The notes below the pieces were generated by a model. The model had not been told where the DNA came from and ran no database searches. It worked only from the letters and a program-made list of their open reading frames with translations. A stretch of DNA of 64,000 bases, taken from the IMG/VR virus record IMGVR_UViG_3300027770_000026, positions 1 through 64,000 of that record; one strand, given 5' to 3'. Each line of letters begins with the position of its first letter. Position 1 is the stretch's first letter. The position numbers and the translations under genes are program-made. Positions 1,550 to 61,949 of this stretch are shown here, in pieces.

Positions 1550-3769
1550 TTACCTAGATGTCGTTAATAACAACTTATCTGTATCTCTATCAAATTGGAA
1601 TGTTACACGCTTTTTAGCTGCACCAATTGCTAGTAATTTACGACTTAGCGGTACCTTAATTAGTTGATCAATCGCCCTACCCATCGGACGTGCGCCCATT
1701 TTCTCGTCGTATCCCTTTTCTAGCAGCAGATCATATGCAGCATCTGTGAGAGCAATCTCACAGTTCTTGTCTGCAATAAGTTCATTAATCTCACGTACAA
1801 ACTTACCTGCAATCGTGCGGATATTTGCACGATCCAGCTTGTTGAATTTGATTACTGCGTCCAGTCGATTGCGGAATTCTGGCGCAAAGAATTCCTTTGT
1901 GGCCTTTTCTTCGTCATCCCTACTTTGATGTATAAAGCCCAAACCAGGTCGTTCTGCTTGTGCAGCACCCAAGTTACTAGTTAATATCACAATACAGCTA
2001 CGGCAGTCTACCCGCTTACCATTGCTGCTGGTAATCCAACCACTGTCCATGATCTGTAGCAGTACATTGCTAACCTGTGGATCTGCTTTTTCAATTTCGT
2101 CTAGTAGCAGTACACAATGAGGATTCTTTTCCACTGCAGAGATTAGCAAGCCGCCGCCAAGATTAGCATCCTCATAGCCAACATATCCAGGAGGTGCGCC
2201 AATTAGCTTGGCAACGCTGTGCTTTTCCTGATATTCACTCATGTCAAACTTAGCAAAGTGAACGCCCATTGCATCGGCGAGCGTCTTAGCTAGTTCAGTC
2301 TTACCTACACCAGTTGGACCTAGGAACAAGAACTGCGCAACAGGACGATTTGGACTCTTAAGTCCTGACCTGCTGATCGTAATACGTTCAATTACCATGT
2401 CCACTGCATGTGTTTGTCCAAACACCCTGTCCTTAATAGTCTTTTCAATGAGGTCAATGCTGTCTGCAGTCTTGATCTTCTCGCTCTTGAACACTTCAAC
2501 AGGCAGCTTAGTAGTCTTGCTCAGTTCCTCATAGATGTCATCACTGTGCAACTTCTTGATCTTCTTAAGACGACTGCGTGTCATAGCAGCATCTAGTATG
2601 TCAATGCACTTGTCGGGCTGCTTACGATCTGAAATCCAACGGTCACTGAGGTCAACACACAGTTCTAACTGTGCAGGAGTCACGTTTACTGCATGGAAGT
2701 CCTGATACTTGCTACGCAGACCCTGCAGAATCTCCACACACAATGCGCGATTTGGCTCGTCAACAGTAATACGATTAAATCGACGCATCATCGCGCGATC
2801 CTTTTCAAAGCTCTTACGGTAATCTTCCCATGTAGTGGCGGCAATTACCTTAAACTCGCGTCGACTTAGCCCTGGCTTAAGCATGTTAGCTAGGTCCATA
2901 CTGCTGTTTTGTCCGGCACCTGCGCCATTTAGCATATGTGCTTCATCGATAAACAACACGCTGTTTGGCTTCTTAGCTAGTGCAGAGGTAACTTCCTTAA
3001 ACCGTTCTTCAAGATCGCCTCGATACTTGGTACCTGCCATCATTGCAGAAATATCTAGACTCCAAATTTCAATCTTGGCAAGTGATTCTGGAATATCCTT
3101 GCTAACGACTCGCTGTGCTAGTCCTTCTACAATAGCAGTCTTACCTACACCCGGATCGCCAATTAGCAACGCATTATGTTTAGTACGACGACTAAGAATG
3201 TGCACCAACTGGTCTAGTTCATTTTCTCGTCCTAACATGGGATCTAGCTTGTTAGTAGCAGCCATGTCGCTGATATTGATACAGTAGGTGCGTAGTACTT
3301 TGGTATCATCGTCGTCAGGCGAGATAGCAGGAACTAAACACTTTACTAGAACTTTCTTAGTAATGCCAAAATTCTTAGCTTGTGTAGCAGCCCAGGACTG
3401 TTGTTCGTCTAGCATGCTATCTAGAATGTCAATACAATCTACTTCGCGCTGCGAATAGAATACACCCTGTCCAAATGCACGATTCATTACTCGTTCAATG
3501 CTTTTAGTTTCTTTTGGCGTGCTGTCGTTTGATTTGGGAATTTCGTTTTCTACGAACGAAACTAATTCCTGCTTATAGTCGTTTACTTTAACATGTAGAG
3601 TTTTGAGTTTAGATACCAGTTCACGATCCTCTTCGAGGATAGCTAGTACTAGTACTTCAATGGTAATGTATTCGCATTCATTCTTACGGGCAATATCGTT
3701 TGCTCGAATAAGAGCTCGCTGCAACGTATGACTTGGTGCTGCGATTAGCATGGGTTTTTCTTTGGCCAT
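1550..3769 (-). CDS. clpA: ClpA-like AAA+ unfoldase (ATP-dependent Clp protease ATP-binding subunit)
   Basis: Clp N-domain, two Walker A (GDPGVGKT, GPTGVGKT), GAMMAGTKYRG-like and GAPPGYVG pore loops, short linker without ClpB M-domain. Confidence 0.93.
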   Translation of the reverse strand: MAKEKPMLIAAPSHTLQRALIRANDIARKNECEYITIEVLVLAILEEDRELVSKLKTLHVKVNDYKQELVSFVENEIPKSNDSTPKETKSIERVMNRAFGQGVFYSQREVDCIDILDSMLDEQQSWAATQAKNFGITKKVLVKCLVPAISPDDDDTKVLRTYCINISDMAATNKLDPMLGRENELDQLVHILSRRTKHNALLIGDPGVGKTAIVEGLAQRVVSKDIPESLAKIEIWSLDISAMMAGTKYRGDLEERFKEVTSALAKKPNSVLFIDEAHMLNGAGAGQNSSMDLANMLKPGLSRREFKVIAATTWEDYRKSFEKDRAMMRRFNRITVDEPNRALCVEILQGLRSKYQDFHAVNVTPAQLELCVDLSDRWISDRKQPDKCIDILDAAMTRSRLKKIKKLHSDDIYEELSKTTKLPVEVFKSEKIKTADSIDLIEKTIKDRVFGQTHAVDMVIERITISRSGLKSPNRPVAQFLFLGPTGVGKTELAKTLADAMGVHFAKFDMSEYQEKHSVAKLIGAPPGYVGYEDANLGGGLLISAVEKNPHCVLLLDEIEKADPQVSNVLLQIMDSGWITSSNGKRVDCRSCIVILTSNLGAAQAERPGLGFIHQSRDDEEKATKEFFAPEFRNRLDAVIKFNKLDRANIRTIAGKFVREINELIADKNCEIALTDAAYDLLLEKGYDEKMGARPMGRAIDQLIKVPLSRKLLAIGAAKKRVTFQFDRDTDKLLLTTSR

Positions 3770-42776: not shown

Positions 42777-44003
42777 TTACTTGCTAATTACCTGAAAACG
42801 TGGGCAAGGTACAACTAATTTACCGCCCGCATTAATAAAGTCTTGCTCTCGCTTGACAAATTCATCAATAAAGTGCCAGGGCAGAACTAGCAGATAATCA
42901 GGTTTAGCAGCTCGCATTTCTTCCTCACTAACAATGGGAATACGTGTACCTACAGTTTCCAATCCAAACTTGTATGGACTACGTTCCGCAATAGCAGTAA
43001 CTAGGTCGGGCGTAATACCAAACAATTGTAATAGAGTATTGCCCTTAGTGCTAGCCCCATATCCATAAACAGTCTTGCCTTCTGCTTTGGCTGCATGTAG
43101 GAACTCCGTTACTTCACGCTTAAGCTGATCAATATTAGCACCAAAGTCTGCCCACAATTGGGGATTGCTTAGATCCCAGTGTGCAGCTTCATATTCCAAT
43201 GTGCTAGCAACGCGGTAGTCGCATACATCGCGCTGCTGTTGTGTGGCAAAGGTGCGCTTGTCACTGGTACTTTTTTGGAAGTAGACGCGGAAACTACCAC
43301 CGTTGGTGTCATTGAGGCTGCAATCGCGGATTACAAAGCCTTCTGCTTCAAACAGTGCCTTGATACTGGTGAGATTGTAATAGTACACATGTTCGTGGCA
43401 AATGTTATCGAATGCCATCTGCTTAAGCATGAGCGGAGTGTAGCTCATCTGCACCACAAACACACCATCGTCTGCTAGGATCTTGTGTACATCACGAATA
43501 AAGGGACGTGGATTTTCTAGATCGTAGAACATAGCAACACAGGTCACTACCTTGGCCTTGCGATCACCGTAGCCCGTGCGCTGATATGCTGCTTCACTGA
43601 AGAAGTCCTGCACTACTGCGTCTGCCACACGAGTACTTTCTGCAATATAGCTATCATCTGCTGGGTCGATACCCACTTTAATAGCAGTATCTGGCACTGC
43701 AGCTAGTAGTGTGCCGTCATTACAAGCAATATCCAACCAAACATCGCCAGTCTTAATGCTGACGCGCTCGCAAACTTCGGCTACAATCTGTTGTAGCTGC
43801 TTGGTCATGCTGGTGTTGATACCCGAACGATACCAATACTGTCCATACATCTTGTCTAGGGGAGCAACACCGTCCAGGCGTACTGCACCAATAGTTTCAT
43901 CCAGATAAAGATCCAAGCTCCAGGGCTTGGTTTCGCGCATCTCACTGCCGGGCTTTACAAAATCACTTACGTAGTGATTGCCTAGTTCTAGTAACTTCTT
44001 CAT
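42777..44003 (-). CDS. NDP-sugar C-methyltransferase-like protein
   Basis: LDIACNDG, FDNICHEH, YGASTKGN, LPWHF. Confidence 0.88.
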   Translation of the reverse strand: MKKLLELGNHYVSDFVKPGSEMRETKPWSLDLYLDETIGAVRLDGVAPLDKMYGQYWYRSGINTSMTKQLQQIVAEVCERVSIKTGDVWLDIACNDGTLLAAVPDTAIKVGIDPADDSYIAESTRVADAVVQDFFSEAAYQRTGYGDRKAKVVTCVAMFYDLENPRPFIRDVHKILADDGVFVVQMSYTPLMLKQMAFDNICHEHVYYYNLTSIKALFEAEGFVIRDCSLNDTNGGSFRVYFQKSTSDKRTFATQQQRDVCDYRVASTLEYEAAHWDLSNPQLWADFGANIDQLKREVTEFLHAAKAEGKTVYGYGASTKGNTLLQLFGITPDLVTAIAERSPYKFGLETVGTRIPIVSEEEMRAAKPDYLLVLPWHFIDEFVKREQDFINAGGKLVVPCPRFQVISK

Positions 44004-45026
44004 TTATACCTCTCGTTTAGCTTGTTCATAGTCGGACTCGCACATATCACGTACAAGTTGTGCAAGATCACAATCAGGTTCCCATCCTAATATTTCTTTA
44101 ATTTTAGTTGGATCACCTAGAAGATTAGTAACGTCAACTGGGCGATAGTATGCGGGGTTAACACGTATTAGTACTTGCCCCGTATTAACATCGCGACCTA
44201 TTTCGTCAACGCCTGACCCTTCCCATTGCAAATCAATACCATAGTATTCCGCGGTAAGTTTGCAGAACTCTCGAATACTGGTTTGCTTGCCGGTAGCAAC
44301 TACATAGTCGTCGGCTCGATCTGTTTGTAGCATCATCCACATGGCACGTACATAGTCCTTAGCATGCCCCCAATCTCGCTTGCTGTCTAGATTACCTAGT
44401 TCAAGCACGTTCTGTTTACCTAACATCATGCGAGCAAATGCGCGGGTGATCTTGCGTGTAACAAATGTTTCACCACGTCGTGGACTTTCGTGATTGAACA
44501 GTATGCCATTACAAGCAAACATGTTGTAGCTTTCACGATAGTTTACAGTGATCCAATAGGCATATAGTTTAGCTACGCCGTATGGACTGCCCGGATAGAA
44601 TGGCGTAGTTTCATTTTGCGGACTGATTTGCCCCACACCAAACATTTCGCTGGTACTGGCTTGATAGAACCTAATACGGTCTTCCATCTTGAGACTGTGT
44701 ATTGCATCTAGTATGCGTAGTGTACCTAGTGCATTAATATCGCTGGTCATAACAGGAGCGTTAAAGCTAACCTTAACATGACTTTGAGCAGCTAGATTGT
44801 ACAACTCATCTGGACGAATTTCGTCAATCAGATTGCGAAGACTATTGCCATCGCTGAGGTCGCTTTGCTGCAATATAATGTGCTGCTTGAGATGACTGAT
44901 GTTTGGATGTGCTGCGTCTGCCGTTCTACGTACTAGTCCATGTACTTCATAACCCTTGTCTAGTAACAGTTCCGCAAGGTAGCTGCCATCTTGTCCGGCA
45001 ACACCTGTAATAAGTGCTCGCTTCAT
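44004..45026 (-). CDS. gmd: GDP-mannose 4,6-dehydratase
   Basis: [44 protein letters not shown]. Confidence 0.96.
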
Positions 45027-47264: not shown

Positions 47265-47864
47265 TTATCCTATCTTCTGAATAACTAATACCATATCATC
47301 ATAGCGCATGTTGATATTACGTAGATCAAACACTTGAATTCGTGTTCTCATCCCATTGGGACTGAGATCATCGAGCAGTGTTTTAATCCAGGCAGAATCT
47401 GGAATGTCTTCGATGACTGCAATACCATTGATATTTAGTTTTGACAGATAGTGCTTAATAAAAAATCTCATCGAGTCCAGTGTGTGGGGACCATCATCAA
47501 TGATGATGTCATACCCGTTGTCTAGCTCGTTAACTGTTTCTGTAGTATACGCATCACATTTCTTTAGTTGTATTCTGTCGTGCTGCTTCCAAAAAAATAG
47601 ACTAATCGTATTATCTAAGCCTTGTATCTCGGCATTGGGAAAGTAACGCTGCCACAACAGCATAGACCCACCATTATGTACCCCAATTTCTAAAACTTTT
47701 TTAGTGGAAAGTCTATAGGGTGCAAATAGCGTTTCGTATACTTCATCAATATAACAATGTCCATTGACTCCTAAGTTCTTATCTAAAACTTGATAGTTTG
47801 GCAAATCTGTTCTGTGTGATCTTAGAACATCATTTGCCAGCTCGCTTAGTAATTTCATTATCAT
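47265..47864 (-). CDS. Class I SAM-dependent methyltransferase
   Basis: VLEIGVHNGGS, IIIDDGPH, IEDI; ATG 47864 after AGGAG. Confidence 0.85.
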   Translation of the reverse strand: MIMKLLSELANDVLRSHRTDLPNYQVLDKNLGVNGHCYIDEVYETLFAPYRLSTKKVLEIGVHNGGSMLLWQRYFPNAEIQGLDNTISLFFWKQHDRIQLKKCDAYTTETVNELDNGYDIIIDDGPHTLDSMRFFIKHYLSKLNINGIAVIEDIPDSAWIKTLLDDLSPNGMRTRIQVFDLRNINMRYDDMVLVIQKIG

Positions 47865-47878
47865 ACTCCTATTAAATC

Positions 47879-47966
47879 TGGCGGAGACGGTGAGATTCGA
47901 ACTCACGGACCAATTACGGTCGCCTCGTTAGCAGTGAGGTACTTTCGGCCACTCAGCCACGTCTCC
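47879..47966 (-). tRNA. trnS: tRNA-Ser(GCU)
   Basis: CT-GCT-AA loop, long V-arm, G73, CCA. Confidence 0.93.
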
Positions 47967-47970
47967 AATT

Positions 47971-48047
47971 TGGCGCCCCCGGAAGGATTCGAACCTCCGA
48001 CCTGGTGGGTAGAAACCACTCGCTCTAATCCTCTGAGCTACGGGGAC
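47971..48047 (-). tRNA. trnR: tRNA-Arg(UCU)
   Basis: TT-TCT-AC loop, CCA. Confidence 0.9.
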
Positions 48048-48054
48048 AAAATTC

Positions 48055-48140
48055 TGGTGCAAGTGGCGGGACTCGAACCCGCAAGCCATTACAGCGACAG
48101 ATTTTAAGTCTGTTGTGTATACCGATTCCACCACACTTGC
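48055..48140 (-). tRNA. trnL: tRNA-Leu(UAA)
   Basis: CT-TAA-AA loop, long V-arm, CCA. Confidence 0.95.
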
Positions 48141-48147
48141 ATAATAA

Positions 48148-48783
48148 TCATACGATCCCACACCGCCACAAGAACAATGTTCTGTCGCTTGTAGTAGGGT
48201 CTTCTGCTGTACCTTCAAAAATAAAGTCTACTGGCTGTGGCAAGTTGAAAGGAGGCAGAAATAGGTTCAACCTAGTCCACTGTACACGACCAGATGAATC
48301 GTCAACACAGTCTTCGTTAGGATATGCTTTCCATGTATAAGACGTAGTTAAAATATATTTTGCACCCGATCGTTGAATATTAGTCAATGCACGATGTATA
48401 TTGGAAAACGACATATGAAACAAGCAATCGCGGCACATTACAAGATCCACCTTGGGTAGATCGTCTGTCAGCAAATTAAGCGTTCTGAAATCGACAGAAG
48501 GGAATCGCTTTTTATTATCCTCGATCATAACTGGCACAATGTCTGCGCCAATATACTTTGTATATCCTAGATCAACATGCTGCATCCAGTTAAAATCACC
48601 GCAAGGAATATCCAACATAGATGTAATGTTATGACGTTCTAATAGTAACGGTAATTCCCGTCTAATATTAACTGTTTGTCGCAAAGTAGAGCCCAATCCT
48701 GATTTGGTCTCGGGATAACCGCCATATGGACCCCATATGTCGTTAACGTATGCATCGGTAAAAATTTGTTCTTCTTTGTTCAT
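48148..48783 (-). CDS. Class I SAM-dependent methyltransferase
   Basis: SGLGS, LDIPCGDFNW, GADIV, CRDCLFH. Confidence 0.85.
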   Translation of the reverse strand: MNKEEQIFTDAYVNDIWGPYGGYPETKSGLGSTLRQTVNIRRELPLLLERHNITSMLDIPCGDFNWMQHVDLGYTKYIGADIVPVMIEDNKKRFPSVDFRTLNLLTDDLPKVDLVMCRDCLFHMSFSNIHRALTNIQRSGAKYILTTSYTWKAYPNEDCVDDSSGRVQWTRLNLFLPPFNLPQPVDFIFEGTAEDPTTSDRTLFLWRCGIV

Positions 48784-49193
48784 ATTTCTGTCCAACTGTA
48801 ATCACCCAAACATTTTACTTCCGCAACATAATGGTAGTCAACCGGTATTCCGGAAGACCATTCGGTGGGACCAGTAAATGCCAGTATCACTTTGTTCTTG
48901 CGAGTATCACGGACCAGCCAATAGCTGCGTCCGGGTACTACCTTAAAGTTATATTCTGCAGCGTGTACCATATCGGTAACTTCTAGCCTACGCTGTATAG
49001 CGTCTGCTTGCCGTTTAAGTACAGTAACCACTTCCATAATACGATGGTATTCTTGCTCGGCTTGCATGCGAGCAATGTTACGCATAATGTCTTTTTCTTC
49101 GTGAATGGCGATGGGCGCAAATTTTGGCGCACCAACTTCCATTGGATACGCTATTGCGTGTCGCTTCATACGATCTTCGTCAGTTAGGTCCAT
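48780..49193 (-). CDS. DUF2452-like hypothetical protein
   Basis: YPMEVGAPKF...GPTEW...GDYSW. Confidence 0.6.
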   Translation of the reverse strand: MDLTDEDRMKRHAIAYPMEVGAPKFAPIAIHEEKDIMRNIARMQAEQEYHRIMEVVTVLKRQADAIQRRLEVTDMVHAAEYNFKVVPGRSYWLVRDTRKNKVILAFTGPTEWSSGIPVDYHYVAEVKCLGDYSWTEI

Positions 49194-49289: not shown

Positions 49290-49366
49290 TGGTCGGGATG
49301 ACAGGATTCAAACCTGCGACATTTTGCTCCCAAAGCAAACGCTCTATCAAACTGAGCTACATCCCG
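49290..49366 (-). tRNA. trnP: tRNA-Pro(UGG)
   Basis: TT-TGG-GA loop, CCA. Confidence 0.93.
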
Positions 49367-49407: not shown

Positions 49408-49498
49408 TGGTCCTTGACCTGGGTAACGATCCCAGCCGTGAACGGTAATCTGCCGCTAAAGAGTTTATAAATCTCTCCTGCACCCTGTGCTGTCAAGG
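49408..49498 (-). tRNA. Atypical tRNA-like gene, anticodon UAU, long variable arm
   Basis: CCTTGAC/GTCAAGG-A-CCA acceptor; GCAC-AGG-GTGC mini D-arm; TTTATAA loop; T-loop ATCGTTA. Confidence 0.7.
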
Positions 49499-49503
49499 AA
49501 ATT

Positions 49504-49579
49504 TGGTGAGACTGGTGGGGTACGATCCCACGACACACGGATTAAAAGTCCGATGCTCTACCAACTGAGCTACAGTCCC
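49504..49579 (-). tRNA. trnK: tRNA-Lys(UUU)
   Basis: CT-TTT-AA loop, CCA; T-loop ATCGTAC atypical. Confidence 0.92.
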
Positions 49580-49588
49580 AATATGTGT

Positions 49589-49616
49589 ATTATACAGCAA
49601 TAGTGTATGCTGTCTA
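49589..49616 (-). promoter_or_regulatory. Sigma70-type promoter for Lys/UAU/Pro/Trp tRNAs
   Basis: TAGACA-N16-TATAAT. Confidence 0.7.
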
Positions 49617-50061: not shown

Positions 50062-50137
50062 TGGTGGGACAACATGGGTTCGAACCATGGACCTAAGCGT
50101 TATCAACACTTTGCTCTACCGGCTGAGCTATTGTCCC
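50062..50137 (-). tRNA. trnI: tRNA-Ile(GAU)
   Basis: TT-GAT-AA loop, CCA. Confidence 0.95.
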
Positions 50138-50401: not shown

Positions 50402-51118
50402 CTAGTCTAGAACTGTGCATCCAGGTACAATTGAATATCCATTTACATCTCTAAATCGTCTAAATACAGCTTCATATATCGCACCTTCCCGCCATAACAA
50501 GTTGCCGTTAGTAAAGCTACTACTAGTAGTGTTCATTGGTGTATAAAAAAAGGTATTTTTAATTATAAAGTTCTGCCTAAACCTTGTTTGCATAACGTCA
50601 TTGAGCCAATTGTCCCCATAACATATGTCTAATCCACCTGGAATATCTATCCAATCAGATTTATGGATAAACATCAACGATCCGCCATTGCCTCCGGTGA
50701 CTCCTTCATGCCAGGGAACAAGATCAATTTCTCCTGTTACTGGCAAACCACAAGATGCATCATAGGATATGTTATAAAATTGATTTGGTTTGAACACCTT
50801 ATGAATCTTATGGAATAGTTTTATATCAACTATGATGTCATCGTTGAGAATACAGATTCTGTTATATCGGCTTACGGCTACGCCAAAATTATATGCAGGA
50901 TTTACATATATGTTTTTACCAAGATCGTATAATTTAACCTTAGGGTGCGTTAATACTTCATGATTTGGCGTAGCTGCAGTATCATTGTCGATGATAATAA
51001 CTTCGCCAATTATGTCTAACTGCACAACAACAGAAAGAAAATCTAAGAATGGAGCAAATCTCCACATGGTGGGCGTCACTACTGAGAATTTAGATTCCTC
51101 TGAAATTGTTAATTCCAC
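50402..51118 (-). CDS. GT2-like glycosyltransferase (paralogue of 9454-10125)
   Basis: VVTPTMW, NIYVNPAYN, ILNDDI, GDNW. Confidence 0.8.
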   Translation of the reverse strand: MELTISEESKFSVVTPTMWRFAPFLDFLSVVVQLDIIGEVIIIDNDTAATPNHEVLTHPKVKLYDLGKNIYVNPAYNFGVAVSRYNRICILNDDIIVDIKLFHKIHKVFKPNQFYNISYDASCGLPVTGEIDLVPWHEGVTGGNGGSLMFIHKSDWIDIPGGLDICYGDNWLNDVMQTRFRQNFIIKNTFFYTPMNTTSSSFTNGNLLWREGAIYEAVFRRFRDVNGYSIVPGCTVLD

Positions 51119-52404
51119 AGCTCGAGCACCTGTTCGTAATACACAAACACATCTTCACTGTAATGCGGAGGACACCCTACAAAGAATACATTCGACAATG
51201 CCTTGTTTGCATTTGGATAGTCTGCTGCTATGCCCAGATGTTGATATCCAGGATGCAATAGTATATTGCCCGCAAAGTAGTTGCGAGTCTGAATTCGATT
51301 ACTTTCAAAGAAAGCCTGCAGTTTTTCTTTATTTGCAGCACTATCTACAATAATAGGTACACCGAACCAGCTGGGATCTGCAGCATCTAGTTTATCTGCT
51401 ATACGAGCTTGTGGAATATGTTTTTCAATTAGCGACTTAATCTTAGCAAAATTAACACGACGCTTACTATCGATTTCGTCAACCTTCTTGAGTTGCTCTA
51501 CTCCAATAGCACCTTGCATATCTAGCGGCTTGAGATTATATCCCATATTGGTAAAGAGATATTTGTGGTCAATCACACCATCATATCCATCCAACCACTT
51601 ATCAAATCTGTTACCACATGTACCACATGCTAATAGATTAGCTGCACCAACACAACGGCAATCTCGCCCCCACCAACTGATACTACGAACAAGATTAATT
51701 AGTTCGATATCGTCAGACGATACCATTCCACCTTCACCGGTAGAAATATGGTGGGCAGGGTAAAATGATGTGGACCAAGCATAATAGTAATCAGTTAACA
51801 GCTTGTTGTTCCACTTTGAACCCAAGCTATCACAATTGTCACCGACCAGTATTAGATTGTGTCGTTGACAGATATCTGCCAGCACATCCATATTGGGCGG
51901 ATTACCCAATACTGGGGACACAAAGATTGCCACCGTATTAGTGTTAATAGCTGATTCGATCTGAGTTACATCAAAATTAAGCGTGTTCATTTCAATATCA
52001 ATGAACACGGGCTTGAGATTATTTTGTACCAGAGGTGCAATGGTGGTGGGAAAGCCCACAGGGGACACAATTACTTCTGCACCGTCGCGCCATGATAGGT
52101 GCTTCTTTAGTGCAGCAATCATGGTAAGGTTAGCCGATGAACCTGAGTTCACCATGTGACTATACTTTACATTGAACTTTTTACCAAATGCCCACTGAAA
52201 CTTAGCAACATTCTCTCCGGATACCAGCCACTTGCCAGTAAGGAATGCACGTACTCCTGCTTCGATCTCATTATGGTCCCAGTATGGGCCAGAATAAAAA
52301 ACTGTGTCCTTAGAGGGATCTAGTTCCTTAGGAGTGTATGCATACTTGGGAGCGCCATTGGCTTTGACTAAAGCCGCAATCATTTGATCAATTTCAGTAG
52401 ACAT
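51109..52404 (-). CDS. rfbH: PLP-dependent DegT/RfbH-type CDP-4-keto-6-deoxyglucose 3-dehydrase-like enzyme
   Basis: NSGSSANL, GFPTT, DNCDSLG, SFYPAHHISTGEGG, GYNLK. Confidence 0.88.
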   Translation of the reverse strand: MSTEIDQMIAALVKANGAPKYAYTPKELDPSKDTVFYSGPYWDHNEIEAGVRAFLTGKWLVSGENVAKFQWAFGKKFNVKYSHMVNSGSSANLTMIAALKKHLSWRDGAEVIVSPVGFPTTIAPLVQNNLKPVFIDIEMNTLNFDVTQIESAINTNTVAIFVSPVLGNPPNMDVLADICQRHNLILVGDNCDSLGSKWNNKLLTDYYYAWSTSFYPAHHISTGEGGMVSSDDIELINLVRSISWWGRDCRCVGAANLLACGTCGNRFDKWLDGYDGVIDHKYLFTNMGYNLKPLDMQGAIGVEQLKKVDEIDSKRRVNFAKIKSLIEKHIPQARIADKLDAADPSWFGVPIIVDSAANKEKLQAFFESNRIQTRNYFAGNILLHPGYQHLGIAADYPNANKALSNVFFVGCPPHYSEDVFVYYEQVLELWN

Positions 52405-52756: not shown

Positions 52757-52830
52757 TGGTAGCGCAGCTTGGAGTTGAACCAAGTTCTCCGGGTTATGAG
52801 CCCAGTGTAGTGCCGTTCTACTACCGCGCA
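52757..52830 (-). tRNA. trnfM: Initiator tRNA-fMet(CAU)
   Basis: 1:72 mismatch, three G-C pairs at base of anticodon stem, CT-CAT-AA. Confidence 0.88.
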
Positions 52831-58791: not shown

Positions 58792-59184
58792 TCAGATAGT
58801 GTCTATTAGACCCAGCTCGTTGGTGTATTTTACATTCTTAATACCGAACTCTGCAATAGCTCGCATGCAACCTTCGCAAGGCTTGGCCATGCCCCAACCA
58901 CTAGCAGTATCCTCTCGGGTACGCAACACCAGCAAGGTAGCTCGCCTAAGATCATCCACAGTTATGTGACGCAGTGCGTTCTTGATTGCATGCATTTCCG
59001 CATGCATATAGATACGCTCCTTGTTCACACTGTACTTGGCCTGCATGGGATCAGTCTTCATACGGTTGTATCCAAAACTGATCACACGCCCACGAATTAC
59101 TACCGCAGCAGCCAACTGATAGCGAAGGTGATCGGACGACTCTGCTATGCGCATGAGCAGTGGAAAAATCCTGTCATTACGCAT
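58792..59184 (-). CDS. Zn-dependent cytidine/dCMP-type deaminase
   Basis: HAEMHA...KPCEGC. Confidence 0.88.
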   Translation of the reverse strand: MRNDRIFPLLMRIAESSDHLRYQLAAAVVIRGRVISFGYNRMKTDPMQAKYSVNKERIYMHAEMHAIKNALRHITVDDLRRATLLVLRTREDTASGWGMAKPCEGCMRAIAEFGIKNVKYTNELGLIDTI

Positions 59185-59974: not shown

Positions 59975-60261
59975 ACAGTTTCCTTATTAGGTACAATCAA
60001 TTGAGCATCATAATATGCCCCGCATTTGGAACACGACATCCTTGTAACCAAATCAGCTACAATGTTCTGTGTGCTACCTTCGTGGTCACAATCGCCCAAT
60101 CGATTGTTTTCCAAATCAATTGCACGAAGTATCATACTGGGAGTGGTATCGGTATCTCGTAGCTTGCCCAGCGCACGACGTAGGGCAACAGGATTACTGA
60201 GCAGTTCAAAGTATTGATCTTCAAACTTCTGTGCGTGAGCTTGCCAGTGTTCTGCGCTCAT
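59971..60261 (-). CDS. Hypothetical protein with possible Zn-ribbon
   Basis: CDH...CSKCG. Confidence 0.6.
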
Positions 60262-61202
60262 ACAAACCTCTTAAAGTATTCAATAGTTGGGATTAGTCCT
60301 TGTTCCAATGCAATAGTAGGACTCCAACTTAGTTGTTCTTTGGCTAGTGTGATGTCCGGACGGCGCTGGCGCGGATCATCATGTGGCAATGTTTCGTATA
60401 ACAATTGTGACTTACTGCCAGTTAGCTGCAATATTTTTTCAGCCAACTCTCGCATGGTGAATTCGCTAGGATTACCCAAGTTAATGGGTCCGGTTACACC
60501 ACTGTTTGTTGCCATCATGCGAACGAATGATTCAATCAAATCGTCTACATAACAAAAGCTGCGAGTTTGATTACCATCACCATAAACGGTAATTGGTTGG
60601 TTGCGTAGTGCTTGCATAATAAATTTACTAACCACACGACCATCATTGGGATGCATACGTGGACCATATGTATTGAAGATGCGCACAACTTTGATGTCTA
60701 GATTATGTTGCCTACGATAGTCAAAGAACAGCGTTTCTGCGCAACGCTTGCCTTCGTCGTAACAACTGCGCACACCAATTGGGTTTACGTGACCCCAATA
60801 GTTTTCTGTTTGTGGATGTTGCTCTGGATCACCATACACTTCGCTGGTGCTGGCTTGTAGAATTTTAGCGCCTGTACGTTTGGCTAGGCCCAGCATGTTA
60901 ATAGCACCATGCACACTGGTCTTGGTTGTTTGTACGGGATCATGTTGATAATGAACAGGACTTGCAGGACACGCCAGGTTATAGATCTCGCCTACTTCAA
61001 TATAAAGCGGGAAGGTAACATCGTGTCGTAACAATTCAAAACGTGGATTATTGAGTAGATGCGCCACGTTAGCTTTGCTGCTTGTATAGAAGTTATCCAG
61101 GCAAATTACATCACGACCTTCATTGAGCAGGCGTTCACAAAGGTGCGAACCTAGGAATCCGGCTCCGCCCGTAACCAATACAGTCTTGTTAAGACGTGTC
61201 AC
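60258..61202 (-). CDS. UDP-glucuronate decarboxylase (UDP-xylose synthase)
   Basis: [44 protein letters not shown]. Confidence 0.93.
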
Positions 61203-61872: not shown

Positions 61873-61949
61873 TGGTGGGCCCAGTAGGATTCTAACCTAC
61901 GATCGGTCGTTTATGAGACGACTGCTTTTGGACACTAAGCTATAGGCCC
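61873..61949 (-). tRNA. trnI: tRNA(CAU), probably Ile2 (lysidine type)
   Basis: CT-CAT-AA loop, GGGCCTA acceptor, A73, CCA; atypical D/T loops. Confidence 0.8.

What the first reader, a model, noticed from the sequence alone, without database searches (positions are those of the whole stretch)
49408..49499. Aberrant class-II tRNA with UAU anticodon alongside a CAU Ile2 tRNA
Seen: a perfect acceptor helix with encoded CCA, D-arm reduced to 4 bp with a 3-nt loop, A-A mismatch closing a UUUAUAA loop, long variable arm (AGCGG/CCGUU) and a non-TPsiC T-loop (AUCGUUA). Known: most bacteria avoid UAU anticodons and read AUA with lysidine-modified CAU (TilS); non-canonical allo-tRNAs with UAU have been reported from mobile tRNA clusters. 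Inference: a TilS-independent AUA decoder, a mistranslating tRNA (long V-arm suggests Ser/Leu/Tyr synthetase recognition) or a nuclease decoy.
Basis: partly seen in the sequence, partly recalled or inferred. Interest (0 to 1): 0.6.

Follow-up and report, generated by a model that had tools for sequence, protein, structure and literature searches.

The report
Phage isoleucine tRNA with extra arm
This is a real, conserved phage transfer RNA that most likely reads the isoleucine codon AUA, built on an unusual five-armed scaffold that standard tRNA finders miss, and it belongs to a widespread phage tRNA lineage for which I found no published description.

Summary
It lies inside the tRNA array of a 266-kb freshwater jumbo phage.

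It is not a decayed gene. I collected about 30 distinct relatives from viral and metagenome contigs, plus one cultured phage, Lactobacillus phage LpeD. All five helices covary: 95% of cells are paired and 23 of 26 pairs change on both sides.

Some relatives have ordinary D and T arms, and one scores 60 bits against the Rfam tRNA model. All close relatives carry anticodon UAU; one more distant relative carries GAU.

The "long variable arm" is a hairpin inserted between the anticodon stem and an intact 5-nt variable loop. Its loop almost always contains GAU.

AUA makes up 25% of the phage's Ile codons and aligns with Ile in homologues. The best reading is therefore an Ile-accepting AUA decoder that does not need lysidine. 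A mistranslating tRNA is unlikely, a decoy role is not excluded, and it is not an allo-tRNA (7/5 stems, A73). Expression and charging could not be tested.

The parts
49408..49498 (-). Whole tRNA-like gene, 91 nt, anticodon UAU, with extra arm, A73 and encoded CCA
   Evidence: Sequence; fold; ARAGORN at relaxed threshold; family covariance model R1 scores it 98.5 bits against 32 bits or less for ordinary tRNAs of the window
49492..49498 (-). Acceptor stem, 5' strand (pairs with 49412-49418)
   Evidence: All 7 pairs change on both sides among 23 relatives
49480..49490 (-). Miniature D arm: 4-bp stem, 3-nt loop AGG. Only one base (A, 49491) separates it from the acceptor stem
   Evidence: All 4 pairs covary. 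The loop keeps GG in relatives. Other family members have a normal-size D arm
49459..49477 (-). Anticodon arm: 5 bp plus an A.A pair, loop UUUAUAA, anticodon UAU at 49467-49469
   Evidence: Sequence. The outer 3 pairs covary. The 31:39 pair is U-A, U.G or U.U in other members
49441..49457 (-). Extra hairpin: 5-bp stem, loop CAGAUUA (49446-49452) with GAU at 49448-49450
   Evidence: All 5 pairs covary. The loop motif is kept in members found without fixing it
49436..49440 (-). 5-nt linker CACGG, read as the original class-I variable loop (positions 44-48)
   Evidence: Relatives without the hairpin go straight from the same anticodon arm to a 5-nt loop and the T arm
49419..49435 (-). T arm: 5-bp stem, loop AUCGUUA (A at position 54, U at 58)
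   Evidence: 4 of 5 pairs covary. The identical arm occurs in 87 IMG/VR loci on ordinary tRNAs
49408..49418 (-). Acceptor stem 3' strand (49412-49418), discriminator A73 (49411), CCA (49408-49410)
   Evidence: A73 in 29 of 30 family members, CCA encoded in all
49504..49579 (-). tRNA-Lys(UUU) 5 nt upstream, in the same probable transcript
   Evidence: ARAGORN and Rfam
49589..49616 (-). Promoter-like site (TAGACA, 16 nt, TATAAT; 11 of 12) upstream of tRNA-Lys
   Evidence: Consensus scan only; not evidence of function
49290..49366 (-). tRNA-Pro(UGG) 41 nt downstream
50062..50137 (-). tRNA-Ile(GAU), the phage's AUU/AUC reader
61873..61949 (-). CAU tRNA, either Ile2 or elongator Met (unresolved)
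   Evidence: Sequence. It resembles the phiKZ-group tRNA that most records annotate as Met and one as Ile. No E. coli match

Best explanation
The element is a working phage tRNA. It is transcribed with its neighbours in the tRNA array, cut out by RNase P and the 3' processing enzymes, charged with isoleucine by the host IleRS, and used on the ribosome to read AUA through a U34 anticodon. It therefore needs no lysidine from TilS.

It adds to, or stands in for, the scarce host tRNA-Ile2 for a phage whose genes use AUA heavily. It belongs to a phage lineage of tRNA-Ile that carries an inserted hairpin between the anticodon stem and the variable loop. In the window's sub-lineage the D arm has also shrunk and the T loop has changed to A54/U58.

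Shown here: the conserved five-helix structure, the family, its place in tRNA arrays, and AUA meaning Ile. Inferred: transcription, processing, charging by IleRS, and decoding.
For: Structure and family:
- A MAFFT alignment of 23 distinct relatives gives 95.3% paired cells, 23 of 26 pairs with changes on both sides, and covariation 0.76 against 0.10-0.15 when partners are slid.
- The D loop keeps GG and the T loop keeps C56, so the elbow contact can form.

Processing signals:
- A73 occurs in 29 of 30 members, and all of them encode CCA.
- U at -1 occurs in 23 of 30 members, against 74% of ordinary tRNAs in these arrays. CCA is encoded in 94% of those ordinary tRNAs.

Link to ordinary tRNAs:
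- The family grades into normal tRNAs. The L080 member has ordinary D and T arms and scores 60 bits on Rfam RF00005.
- ARAGORN at default settings calls several members tRNA-Ile(tat).

Isoleucine assignment:
- Members lie inside arrays of 15-45 tRNAs and are the only UAU tRNA there.
- No close relative has another anticodon. One more distant relative with the same extra arm has GAU, also an Ile anticodon (L065).
- AUA occurs 1197 times in 247 ORFs, 15.4 per 1000 codons and 25% of Ile codons.
- With AUA masked as X, the aligned residues in other phages are I 87 of 236 (AUU 39, AUC 31), L 27, V 19, S 14 and Y 0.
- The strong Ile determinants are the discriminator and the anticodon positions, with t6A37 (PMC9976931). 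A73, A35, U36, A37 and A38 are all present.
- U34 tRNA-Ile decodes AUA without lysidine in Mycoplasma mobile and in a Bacillus subtilis tilS deletion strain (PMC3575796, PMC3919564).

Transcription:
- A promoter-like site lies just upstream of the adjacent tRNA-Lys.
Against: - There is no expression, processing or charging evidence. No RNA run holds the region.
- The core is unusual: A instead of U at position 8, a 3-nt D loop and an A54 T loop. The E. coli minor Ile determinants in the D loop and stems are not conserved.
- An unmodified U34 could also read AUG.
- If the CAU tRNA at 61873-61949 is Ile2, the phage may already have an AUA reader.
- The conserved GAU loop of the extra arm has no role in this model.
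- No phage IleRS-type gene was found, so charging rests on an unknown host enzyme.
Confidence: 0.6

Rival explanations
1. A tRNA-shaped RNA that is not used for decoding. It would act as a decoy or sponge for a host tRNA-targeting defence nuclease or another tRNA-binding factor. The anticodon arm and the GAU-loop hairpin would be the bait.
For: - The anticodon arm and the extra-arm loop are the most conserved parts, while the acceptor, D and T arms change freely.
- The GAU loop has no known job in decoding.
- Phage tRNAs are known to counter tRNA-cleaving defences (PMC10264068, PMC11555353).
- A T-loop nuclease that requires U54 and U55 has been described (PMC13462974).
- The window copy has a non-standard core.
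Against: - The full set of features needed for translation is kept: a 7/5 acceptor-T domain, A73, CCA, U33, A37 and the GG/C56 elbow.
- It is the sole UAU tRNA in otherwise near-complete tRNA sets.
- Some members are fully canonical apart from the extra hairpin.
- A decoy would be expected to keep the nuclease's target motifs, but the window copy has lost the UUC of the T loop.
Confidence: 0.17
2. A missense tRNA. The long arm would make SerRS, LeuRS or TyrRS charge it, so AUA would be read as Ser, Leu or Tyr, either as deliberate recoding or to poison host translation.
For: - It has a long extra arm.
- Allo-tRNAs with UAU anticodons exist, and allo-tRNAs with Leu anticodons inserted Ser in E. 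coli (PMC5389517).
- A73 is shared with bacterial tRNA-Leu and tRNA-Tyr.
- Ser is slightly more frequent opposite AUA (about 5-6%) than opposite AUU (2%).
Against: - AUA aligns mainly with Ile, then Leu and Val, and never with Tyr.
- AUA occurs about 1200 times in the phage's own ORFs.
- G73, the Ser-type discriminator, is absent in all 30 members.
- The D loop is unlike that of tRNA-Leu.
- Position 35 is A, whereas to my knowledge TyrRS relies on U35.
- The hairpin is inserted before a 5-nt variable loop, not at the 45/46 site.
- Similar hairpins sit on Thr, Lys, Gln, Glu, Asn and Pro tRNAs in the same arrays.
Confidence: 0.05
3. The extra hairpin is a second, anticodon-like recognition arm. 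Its GAU loop would be read by IleRS or another factor specific to tRNA-Ile, giving Ile identity to a tRNA whose real anticodon starts with U. This is a special case of the best explanation.
For: - The hairpin is a 5-bp stem with a 7-nt loop and GAU at the centre, the layout of an anticodon arm.
- The motif holds in members found without fixing it, while the stem covaries: CAGAUUA, UAGAUGA, CUGAUUA, CCGAUUA and AGAUG.
- GAU is in the arm's loop in 9 of 17 long tRNA-Ile, against 5 of 172 Ser, Leu and Tyr tRNAs.
Against: - By textbook tRNA geometry, the variable-arm position is far from where IleRS holds the anticodon.
- L197/L200 lack GAU.
- The member with a GAU anticodon (L065) keeps the arm although it would not need it.
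- Shared descent inflates the counts.
Confidence: 0.1
4. A decaying tRNA pseudogene or a chance hairpin cluster.
For: Default ARAGORN and Rfam miss it. It has an A.A pair, a tiny D loop and a non-standard T loop.
Against: Compensatory change is seen in all five helices across about 30 relatives from many samples. None of 200 shuffles folds as well.
Confidence: 0.02

Closest known systems
tRNA-Ile with anticodon UAU that reads AUA without lysidine (Mycoplasma mobile tRNA-Ile(UAU); Bacillus subtilis tilS-deletion suppressor), PMC3575796 and PMC3919564
   Same: UAU anticodon, A37, A73, and the presumed task of reading AUA as Ile without TilS.
   Different: Those are ordinary class-I cloverleaves of cellular genomes. 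This one is phage-borne and has an inserted hairpin with a conserved GAU loop. In the window's sub-lineage it also has a 3-nt D loop, A8 and an A54/U58 T loop. Charging and decoding are untested here.
Allo-tRNAs (Mukai et al., PMC5389517)
   Same: Found by metagenome mining, long extra arm, short D loop, longer anticodon stem possible, and UAU is a common allo-tRNA anticodon. Related 8/4 tRNAs occur in phage tRNA clusters.
   Different: Allo-tRNAs are defined by an 8/4 or 9/3 acceptor/T layout and mostly have Ser identity. This family is 7/5 with covariation on every pair, has A73, has a single anticodon (UAU, rarely GAU) rather than 35, and occurs in phages rather than Acidobacteria, Clostridia or Proteobacteria.
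Canonical class-II tRNAs (Leu, Ser, bacterial Tyr)
   Same: A base-paired arm in the variable region, and about 85-95 nt in total.
   Different: In the phage's own Leu, Ser and Tyr tRNAs, 1-2 nt follow the arm. Here 5 nt follow it and 0-4 precede it, as if a hairpin was inserted ahead of an intact class-I variable loop. The anticodon and D loop do not match any of the three.
Bacterial tRNA-Sec (Rfam RF01852)
   Same: Short D loop plus long extra arm. The L092 member's best Rfam hit is tRNA-Sec.
   Different: That hit is 27.4 bits against a threshold of 47. The layout is 7/5 rather than 8/5, the D stem has 4 bp rather than 6, and the anticodon is UAU rather than UCA.
Phage tRNAs that escape tRNA-cleaving host defences (PMC10264068, PMC11555353)
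   Same: A phage-encoded copy of a tRNA function whose loops differ from the usual host form.
   Different: No nuclease, host or escape phenotype is known for this one. The link is an idea only.

Membership tests
tRNA (Rfam RF00005; general cloverleaf) | Score at or above the curated 29 bits on the Rfam tRNA model | tested here: not met
   The window copy has no hit even at E <= 10 in 141 nt. A family member with ordinary D and T arms (L080) scores 60 bits.
tRNA (Rfam RF00005; general cloverleaf) | 7-bp acceptor plus 5-bp T stem, discriminator and CCA, 7-nt anticodon loop with U33 and purine 37, GG in the D loop and C56 in the T loop | tested here: met
   Sequence; covariation on all 12 acceptor and T pairs except one invariant G-C; invariant columns.
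tRNA (Rfam RF00005; general cloverleaf) | U8, a D loop of 7-11 nt, and T54/A58 in the T loop | tested here: not met
   Position 8 is A (A in 17 of 30 members), the D loop is 3 nt, and the T loop is AUCGUUA.
Allo-tRNA | 8/4 or 9/3 acceptor/T-stem layout (PMC5389517) | tested here: not met
   7 acceptor pairs and 5 T pairs are all supported by covariation. An eighth pair (-1:73) is just the U(-1) common to all tRNAs of these arrays.
Allo-tRNA | Ser identity (G73 with a long arm), or Ala identity via G3:U70 | tested here: not met
   A73 in 29 of 30 members and U73 in one. The window copy has U3-A70.
Allo-tRNA | Many different anticodons on one scaffold | tested here: not met
   A scan with the anticodon left free found only UAU. 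The covariance-model search found UAU, plus one more distant GAU member.
tRNA-Ile(UAU), lysidine-independent AUA reader | Anticodon UAU with A37, A38 and A73 | tested here: met
   Ile determinants as listed in PMC9976931.
tRNA-Ile(UAU), lysidine-independent AUA reader | AUA means Ile in the genome that carries it | tested here: met
   Aligned-codon test, with and without masking AUA.
tRNA-Ile(UAU), lysidine-independent AUA reader | Charged by IleRS and reads AUA on the ribosome | not testable with these tools
   No RNA runs hold the region, and this needs biochemistry.
Class-II tRNA (Leu/Ser/Tyr) | Arm inserted at 45/46 with 1-2 nt before the T stem, and a Leu, Ser or Tyr anticodon | tested here: not met
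   A 5-nt 3' linker and anticodon UAU.
Bacterial tRNA-Sec | 8/5 layout, 6-bp D stem, UCA anticodon, RF01852 score of 47 bits or more | tested here: not met

The most novel reading that the evidence does not exclude
The inserted hairpin is a second, anticodon-like arm. Its conserved GAU loop, which is the anticodon of the major tRNA-Ile, would be what IleRS or another Ile-specific factor recognises, while the real anticodon UAU is left free to read AUA. That would be a natural tRNA in which identity and decoding sit on two separate arms, spread among phages of unrelated hosts.
Probability: 0.1. Interest if true: 0.85.

Novelty: new variant of a known kind. Interest (0 to 1): 0.55.

Why it matters
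- **Missed genes.** Standard finders miss the window copy, so the tRNA sets and codon-supply estimates of such phages are incomplete. The AUA reader is exactly the tRNA whose absence would be misread as dependence on host TilS.
- **Tolerance of the tRNA scaffold.** The family shows that a tRNA can carry an extra hairpin ahead of the variable loop, a 3-nt D loop, A8 and an A54/U58 T loop and still stay under strong selection.
- **Use in engineering.** This is useful for designing orthogonal tRNAs, and for AUA codon reassignment work, where lysidine-independent AUA readers are wanted.
- **A ready experiment.** The conserved GAU loop of the extra arm is an unexplained feature that can be tested directly.
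- **A defence link.** The A54 T loops, seen against a newly described T-loop nuclease, suggest a testable route by which phages escape a defence.

Tried and rejected
**Rejected on evidence**
- Pseudogene or chance structure: rejected by covariation.
- Allo-tRNA or tRNA-Sec membership: rejected on stem layout, discriminator and scores.
- An 8-bp acceptor stem: U(-1) is general in these arrays.
- The GAU hairpin as the real anticodon arm, with the UAU hairpin as the insert. This is rejected for three reasons:
  - Class-I relatives keep the UAU arm and lack the other.
  - L197/L200 have a 4-5-nt loop there.
  - The GAU loop lacks U33 and a purine at position 37.

**Searched, nothing found**
- Phage-encoded IleRS-type enzyme: none.
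- TilS-type PP-loop enzyme: only an 18-bit sub-threshold hit at 139761-140216.
- Cultured-phage relatives of the window copy by blastn: none. A relative's sequence found only Lactobacillus phage LpeD.
- Cellular genomes: 1 true member among 11 pattern hits, on a 6-kb contig full of tRNAs binned with a Saprospiraceae MAG. It is probably phage DNA.
- Literature: searches for a long-arm phage tRNA-Ile found no description.

**Could not resolve or test**
- Expression: no RNA run holds the region. Read laying was therefore not used, because DNA contigs cannot show an RNA.
- Whether the CAU tRNA at 61873-61949 is Ile2: no E. coli match, and phage annotations are split between Met and Ile.

**Other**
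- One search was a mistyped test and gave nothing.

Full report
**Setting.** The window is the first 64 kb of a 265,892-base IMG/VR virus record that CheckV rates about 80% complete. It is the same contig as a freshwater metagenome scaffold. It carries 22 tRNA genes that ARAGORN finds at default settings, all on the minus strand, and a permuted tmRNA just outside the window. Protein genes are interspersed among them. They include sugar-nucleotide enzymes, and elsewhere in the record a T4-type terminase, a tail sheath, a family-B polymerase and ribonucleotide reductase. This is a jumbo phage. DNA runs that hold the region are freshwater metagenomes.

**The observation.**
- a 7-bp acceptor stem, A73 and an encoded CCA
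- a single A between the acceptor and a 4-bp D stem with loop AGG
- an anticodon stem whose innermost pair is A.A around loop UUUAUAA
- a 5-bp hairpin with loop CAGAUUA, followed by five unpaired bases
- a 5-bp T stem with loop AUCGUUA

The minimum-energy fold is this five-helix shape, with z = -3.16 and none of 200 shuffles as stable. Default ARAGORN and the Rfam tRNA and tRNA-Sec models do not report it, even when only 141 nt are searched at E <= 10. ARAGORN at 80% stringency calls tRNA-Ile(tat) at 49408-49498.

**It is a conserved family, not a wreck.** I scanned public collections with four kinds of pattern:
- the T arm alone
- the anticodon loop plus the hairpin loop
- the same pattern with the anticodon left free
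- the anticodon loop plus a canonical T loop with the hairpin left free

These scans returned about 30 distinct relatives from viral and metagenome contigs. A plain MAFFT alignment of 23 of them has 95.3% of cells paired under the five-helix structure. In it, 23 of 26 pairs change on both sides, and the covariation score is 0.76 against 0.10-0.15 when the 3' partners are slid by one to three columns. Each helix is supported on its own: acceptor 7 of 7 pairs, D 4 of 4, extra arm 5 of 5, T 4 of 5. For the anticodon stem it is 3 of 5, the two innermost pairs having been fixed by my search patterns.

A covariance model built from this alignment scores the window copy at 98.5 bits and every ordinary tRNA of the window at 32 bits or less. 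Over 831 kb of other phage tRNA arrays it found five further clear members at 56-86 bits, and three weaker long-arm tRNAs at 36-42 bits, just above or among the ordinary tRNAs.

**The odd parts are lineage traits.**
- **T arm.** The exact T arm of the window copy, with A at position 54 and U at 58, occurs in 87 IMG/VR loci, mostly on normal-looking Asn, Lys, Tyr and Cys tRNAs. The neighbouring tRNA-Lys has a similar loop.
- **D and T arms in relatives.** Several members have the usual T-loop sequence. L080, L158, L065 and the LpeD copy also have a normal D arm. The L080 member scores 60 bits on the Rfam tRNA model.
- **The extra hairpin.** In the fetched arrays ARAGORN finds similar small hairpins, often with GNRA loops, in the variable region of Thr, Lys, Gln, Glu, Asn and Pro tRNAs.
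- **Origin of the hairpin.** Two contigs hold a tRNA with a nearly identical anticodon arm (same 13-base core) that runs straight into a 5-nt variable loop and the T arm. The hairpin is therefore best read as an insertion between position 43 and an intact class-I variable loop. This explains the five bases after it. The phage's own Leu, Ser and Tyr tRNAs have only one or two.

**What it most likely does.**
- **Where it sits.** Members always lie in large phage tRNA arrays of up to 45 genes. There they are the only UAU tRNA, next to tRNA-Ile(GAU) and two or three CAU tRNAs.
- **Which anticodons occur.** No close relative has another anticodon. One more distant relative with the same kind of arm has GAU, also an isoleucine anticodon (L065).
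- **Processing signals.** A73 is present in 29 of 30 members and all of them encode CCA. The base before the 5' end is U in 23 of 30. For ordinary tRNAs of these arrays, U(-1) is 74% and encoded CCA is 94%. To my knowledge U(-1) is the base RNase P prefers. The window copy lies 5 nt after tRNA-Lys, which has a near-consensus promoter-like site upstream (a consensus match only).
- **Codon demand.** AUA is frequent in the phage: 1197 codons in 247 long ORFs, 15.4 per 1000 and a quarter of all Ile codons.
- **Meaning of AUA.** I aligned the phage's ORFs to other phage loci and read the aligned codons. AUA sits opposite Ile in 98 of 241 cases (AUU 43, AUC 33), then Leu 28 and Val 24, the same profile as AUU and AUC. 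With AUA masked as X so that it cannot steer the alignment, the counts are Ile 87 of 236, Leu 27, Val 19, Ser 14 and Tyr 0. Site by site, Ile leads at 29 of 89 sites. AUA is therefore read as Ile.
- **Identity elements.** The strong isoleucine determinants are the discriminator and the anticodon positions, with t6A37 (PMC9976931), and all are present. tRNA-Ile with U34 reads AUA without lysidine in Mycoplasma mobile and in a Bacillus subtilis strain lacking tilS (PMC3575796, PMC3919564). IleRS is a class-I enzyme related to LeuRS, which handles long-arm tRNAs, so by inference an extra arm need not block it.

I therefore read the element as an Ile-accepting AUA reader that does not need TilS, with confidence about 0.6. 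That it is a genuine, selected tRNA-like gene I hold at about 0.95.

**What remains open.**
- **Expression and charging.** Nothing here shows either. No RNA run holds the region.
- **The GAU loop.** The extra arm's stem covaries freely, yet its loop keeps a central GAU in members found without fixing it (CAGAUUA, UAGAUGA, CUGAUUA, CCGAUUA, AGAUG). This includes the unannotated copy in Lactobacillus phage LpeD. Only L197/L200 differ. GAU is in the arm's loop in 9 of 17 long tRNA-Ile, against 5 of 172 Ser, Leu and Tyr tRNAs, though shared descent inflates this. GAU is the anticodon of the major tRNA-Ile. A second recognition handle, a tertiary dock and a bait for a nuclease are all possible, and none was tested.
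- **A possible second AUA reader.** The CAU tRNA at 61873-61949 has the C4-G69 and C5-G68 pairs which, as I recall from E. coli work (not checked in the papers held here), direct TilS. Similarity searches did not settle whether it is Ile2 or Met. If it is Ile2, the phage carries two AUA readers.

**Comparison with known kinds.**
- **Allo-tRNAs** are defined by 8/4 or 9/3 stems, mostly have Ser identity, and carry many anticodons (PMC5389517, PMC7609411). This family is 7/5, has A73 and has essentially one anticodon, so it is not an allo-tRNA.
- **tRNA-Sec:** the best Rfam hit of a relative is sub-threshold (27.4 against 47 bits).
- **Canonical class-II tRNAs:** the arm's position and the anticodon both differ.
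- **tRNA-Ile(UAU):** functionally this is the closest known kind, on a new scaffold.

My literature searches found no description of a long-arm phage tRNA-Ile. I rate it a new variant of a known kind.

**Limits.**
- Relatives were found by exact patterns, so the anticodon loop (and in some scans the hairpin loop) is conserved by construction.
- The covariance model could be run only on fetched loci.
- ORFs for the codon test are long open frames, not curated genes.
- The host is unknown.

Noticed in passing
window 49504-49579 (tRNA-Lys) and 49419-49435; loci L004-L090: T loops with A54 and U58 (AUCGUUA, AUCGUAA, AUCGUUC and similar) in place of the usual T-loop sequence occur in about 7% of 1283 distinct phage tRNAs fetched. 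The exact 17-nt arm of the candidate sits on Asn, Lys, Tyr and Cys tRNAs in 87 IMG/VR loci. A 2026 paper (PMC13462974) reports a defence nuclease that cuts the T loop at UUC and is blocked by U54 or U55 changes. It leaves open whether phage tRNAs are targeted, so these loops may be escape variants.
   Followed up: partly
window 49290-49366 (tRNA-Pro) and 61873-61949 (CAU tRNA): C56 of the T loop is replaced (UUUGAAU and UUAGAAU) and the D loops lack the usual GG, as if the G19:C56 elbow pair had been swapped for another pair.
   Followed up: no
loci fetched (for example L054, L063, L080, L065): Small extra hairpins, often with GNRA loops, sit in the variable region of Thr, Lys, Gln, Glu, Asn, Pro and Met tRNAs that are normally class I. 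They are usually followed by 4-5 unpaired bases. This looks like a general habit of these phage tRNAs, and I found no paper on it.
   Followed up: partly
L216:1498-1589 (Lactobacillus phage LpeD, MF787246.1): A cultured Herelleviridae phage carries an unannotated 92-nt tRNA-Ile(tat) with the same CAGAUUA extra-arm loop. ARAGORN finds nine tRNAs in this 3-kb stretch, where the record lists none.
   Followed up: partly
G000 70642-71015 (outside the window): A permuted (two-piece type) tmRNA gene with tag ANDSNYDMALAA in the phage genome.
   Followed up: no
window 33072-61949: The 22-tRNA set covers 18 amino acids and lacks Phe and Cys. The CAU tRNA at 52757-52830 looks like an initiator: mismatch at 1:72 and GGG/CCC in the anticodon stem.
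   Followed up: no
L068 (tRNA 'Pyl(cta)') and a 92-nt 'Stop(tta)' tRNA in another fetched locus: Amber-type and ochre-type suppressor-like tRNAs occur in phage arrays. One of them shares its array with a family member.
   Followed up: no
window 42777-45026, 47265-48795, 51109-52404, 60258-61202: Sugar-nucleotide modification genes lie between the tRNA genes: a C-methyltransferase, two NAD-dependent epimerase/dehydratases, an aminotransferase and two methyltransferases.
   Followed up: no
window 58792-59184 and 1550-3769: A 130-aa cytidine/dCMP-deaminase-fold protein, also found near a family member in L093, and a ClpB-like two-ring AAA+ protein encoded by the phage.
   Followed up: no
G000 whole record: AUA use is very uneven. 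It is 5-9% of Ile codons in ribonucleotide reductase, the polymerase, the ClpB-like protein and the tail sheath, but 41% in the terminase, with a median of 28% across ORFs. The record also has a 4802-codon ORF at 174390-188798.
   Followed up: no
L100 (contig CALDTZ010000008.1, binned as a Saprospiraceae MAG): A 6.3-kb contig made almost entirely of tRNA genes (15, plus a family member). It looks like phage DNA binned into a bacterial MAG.
   Followed up: no
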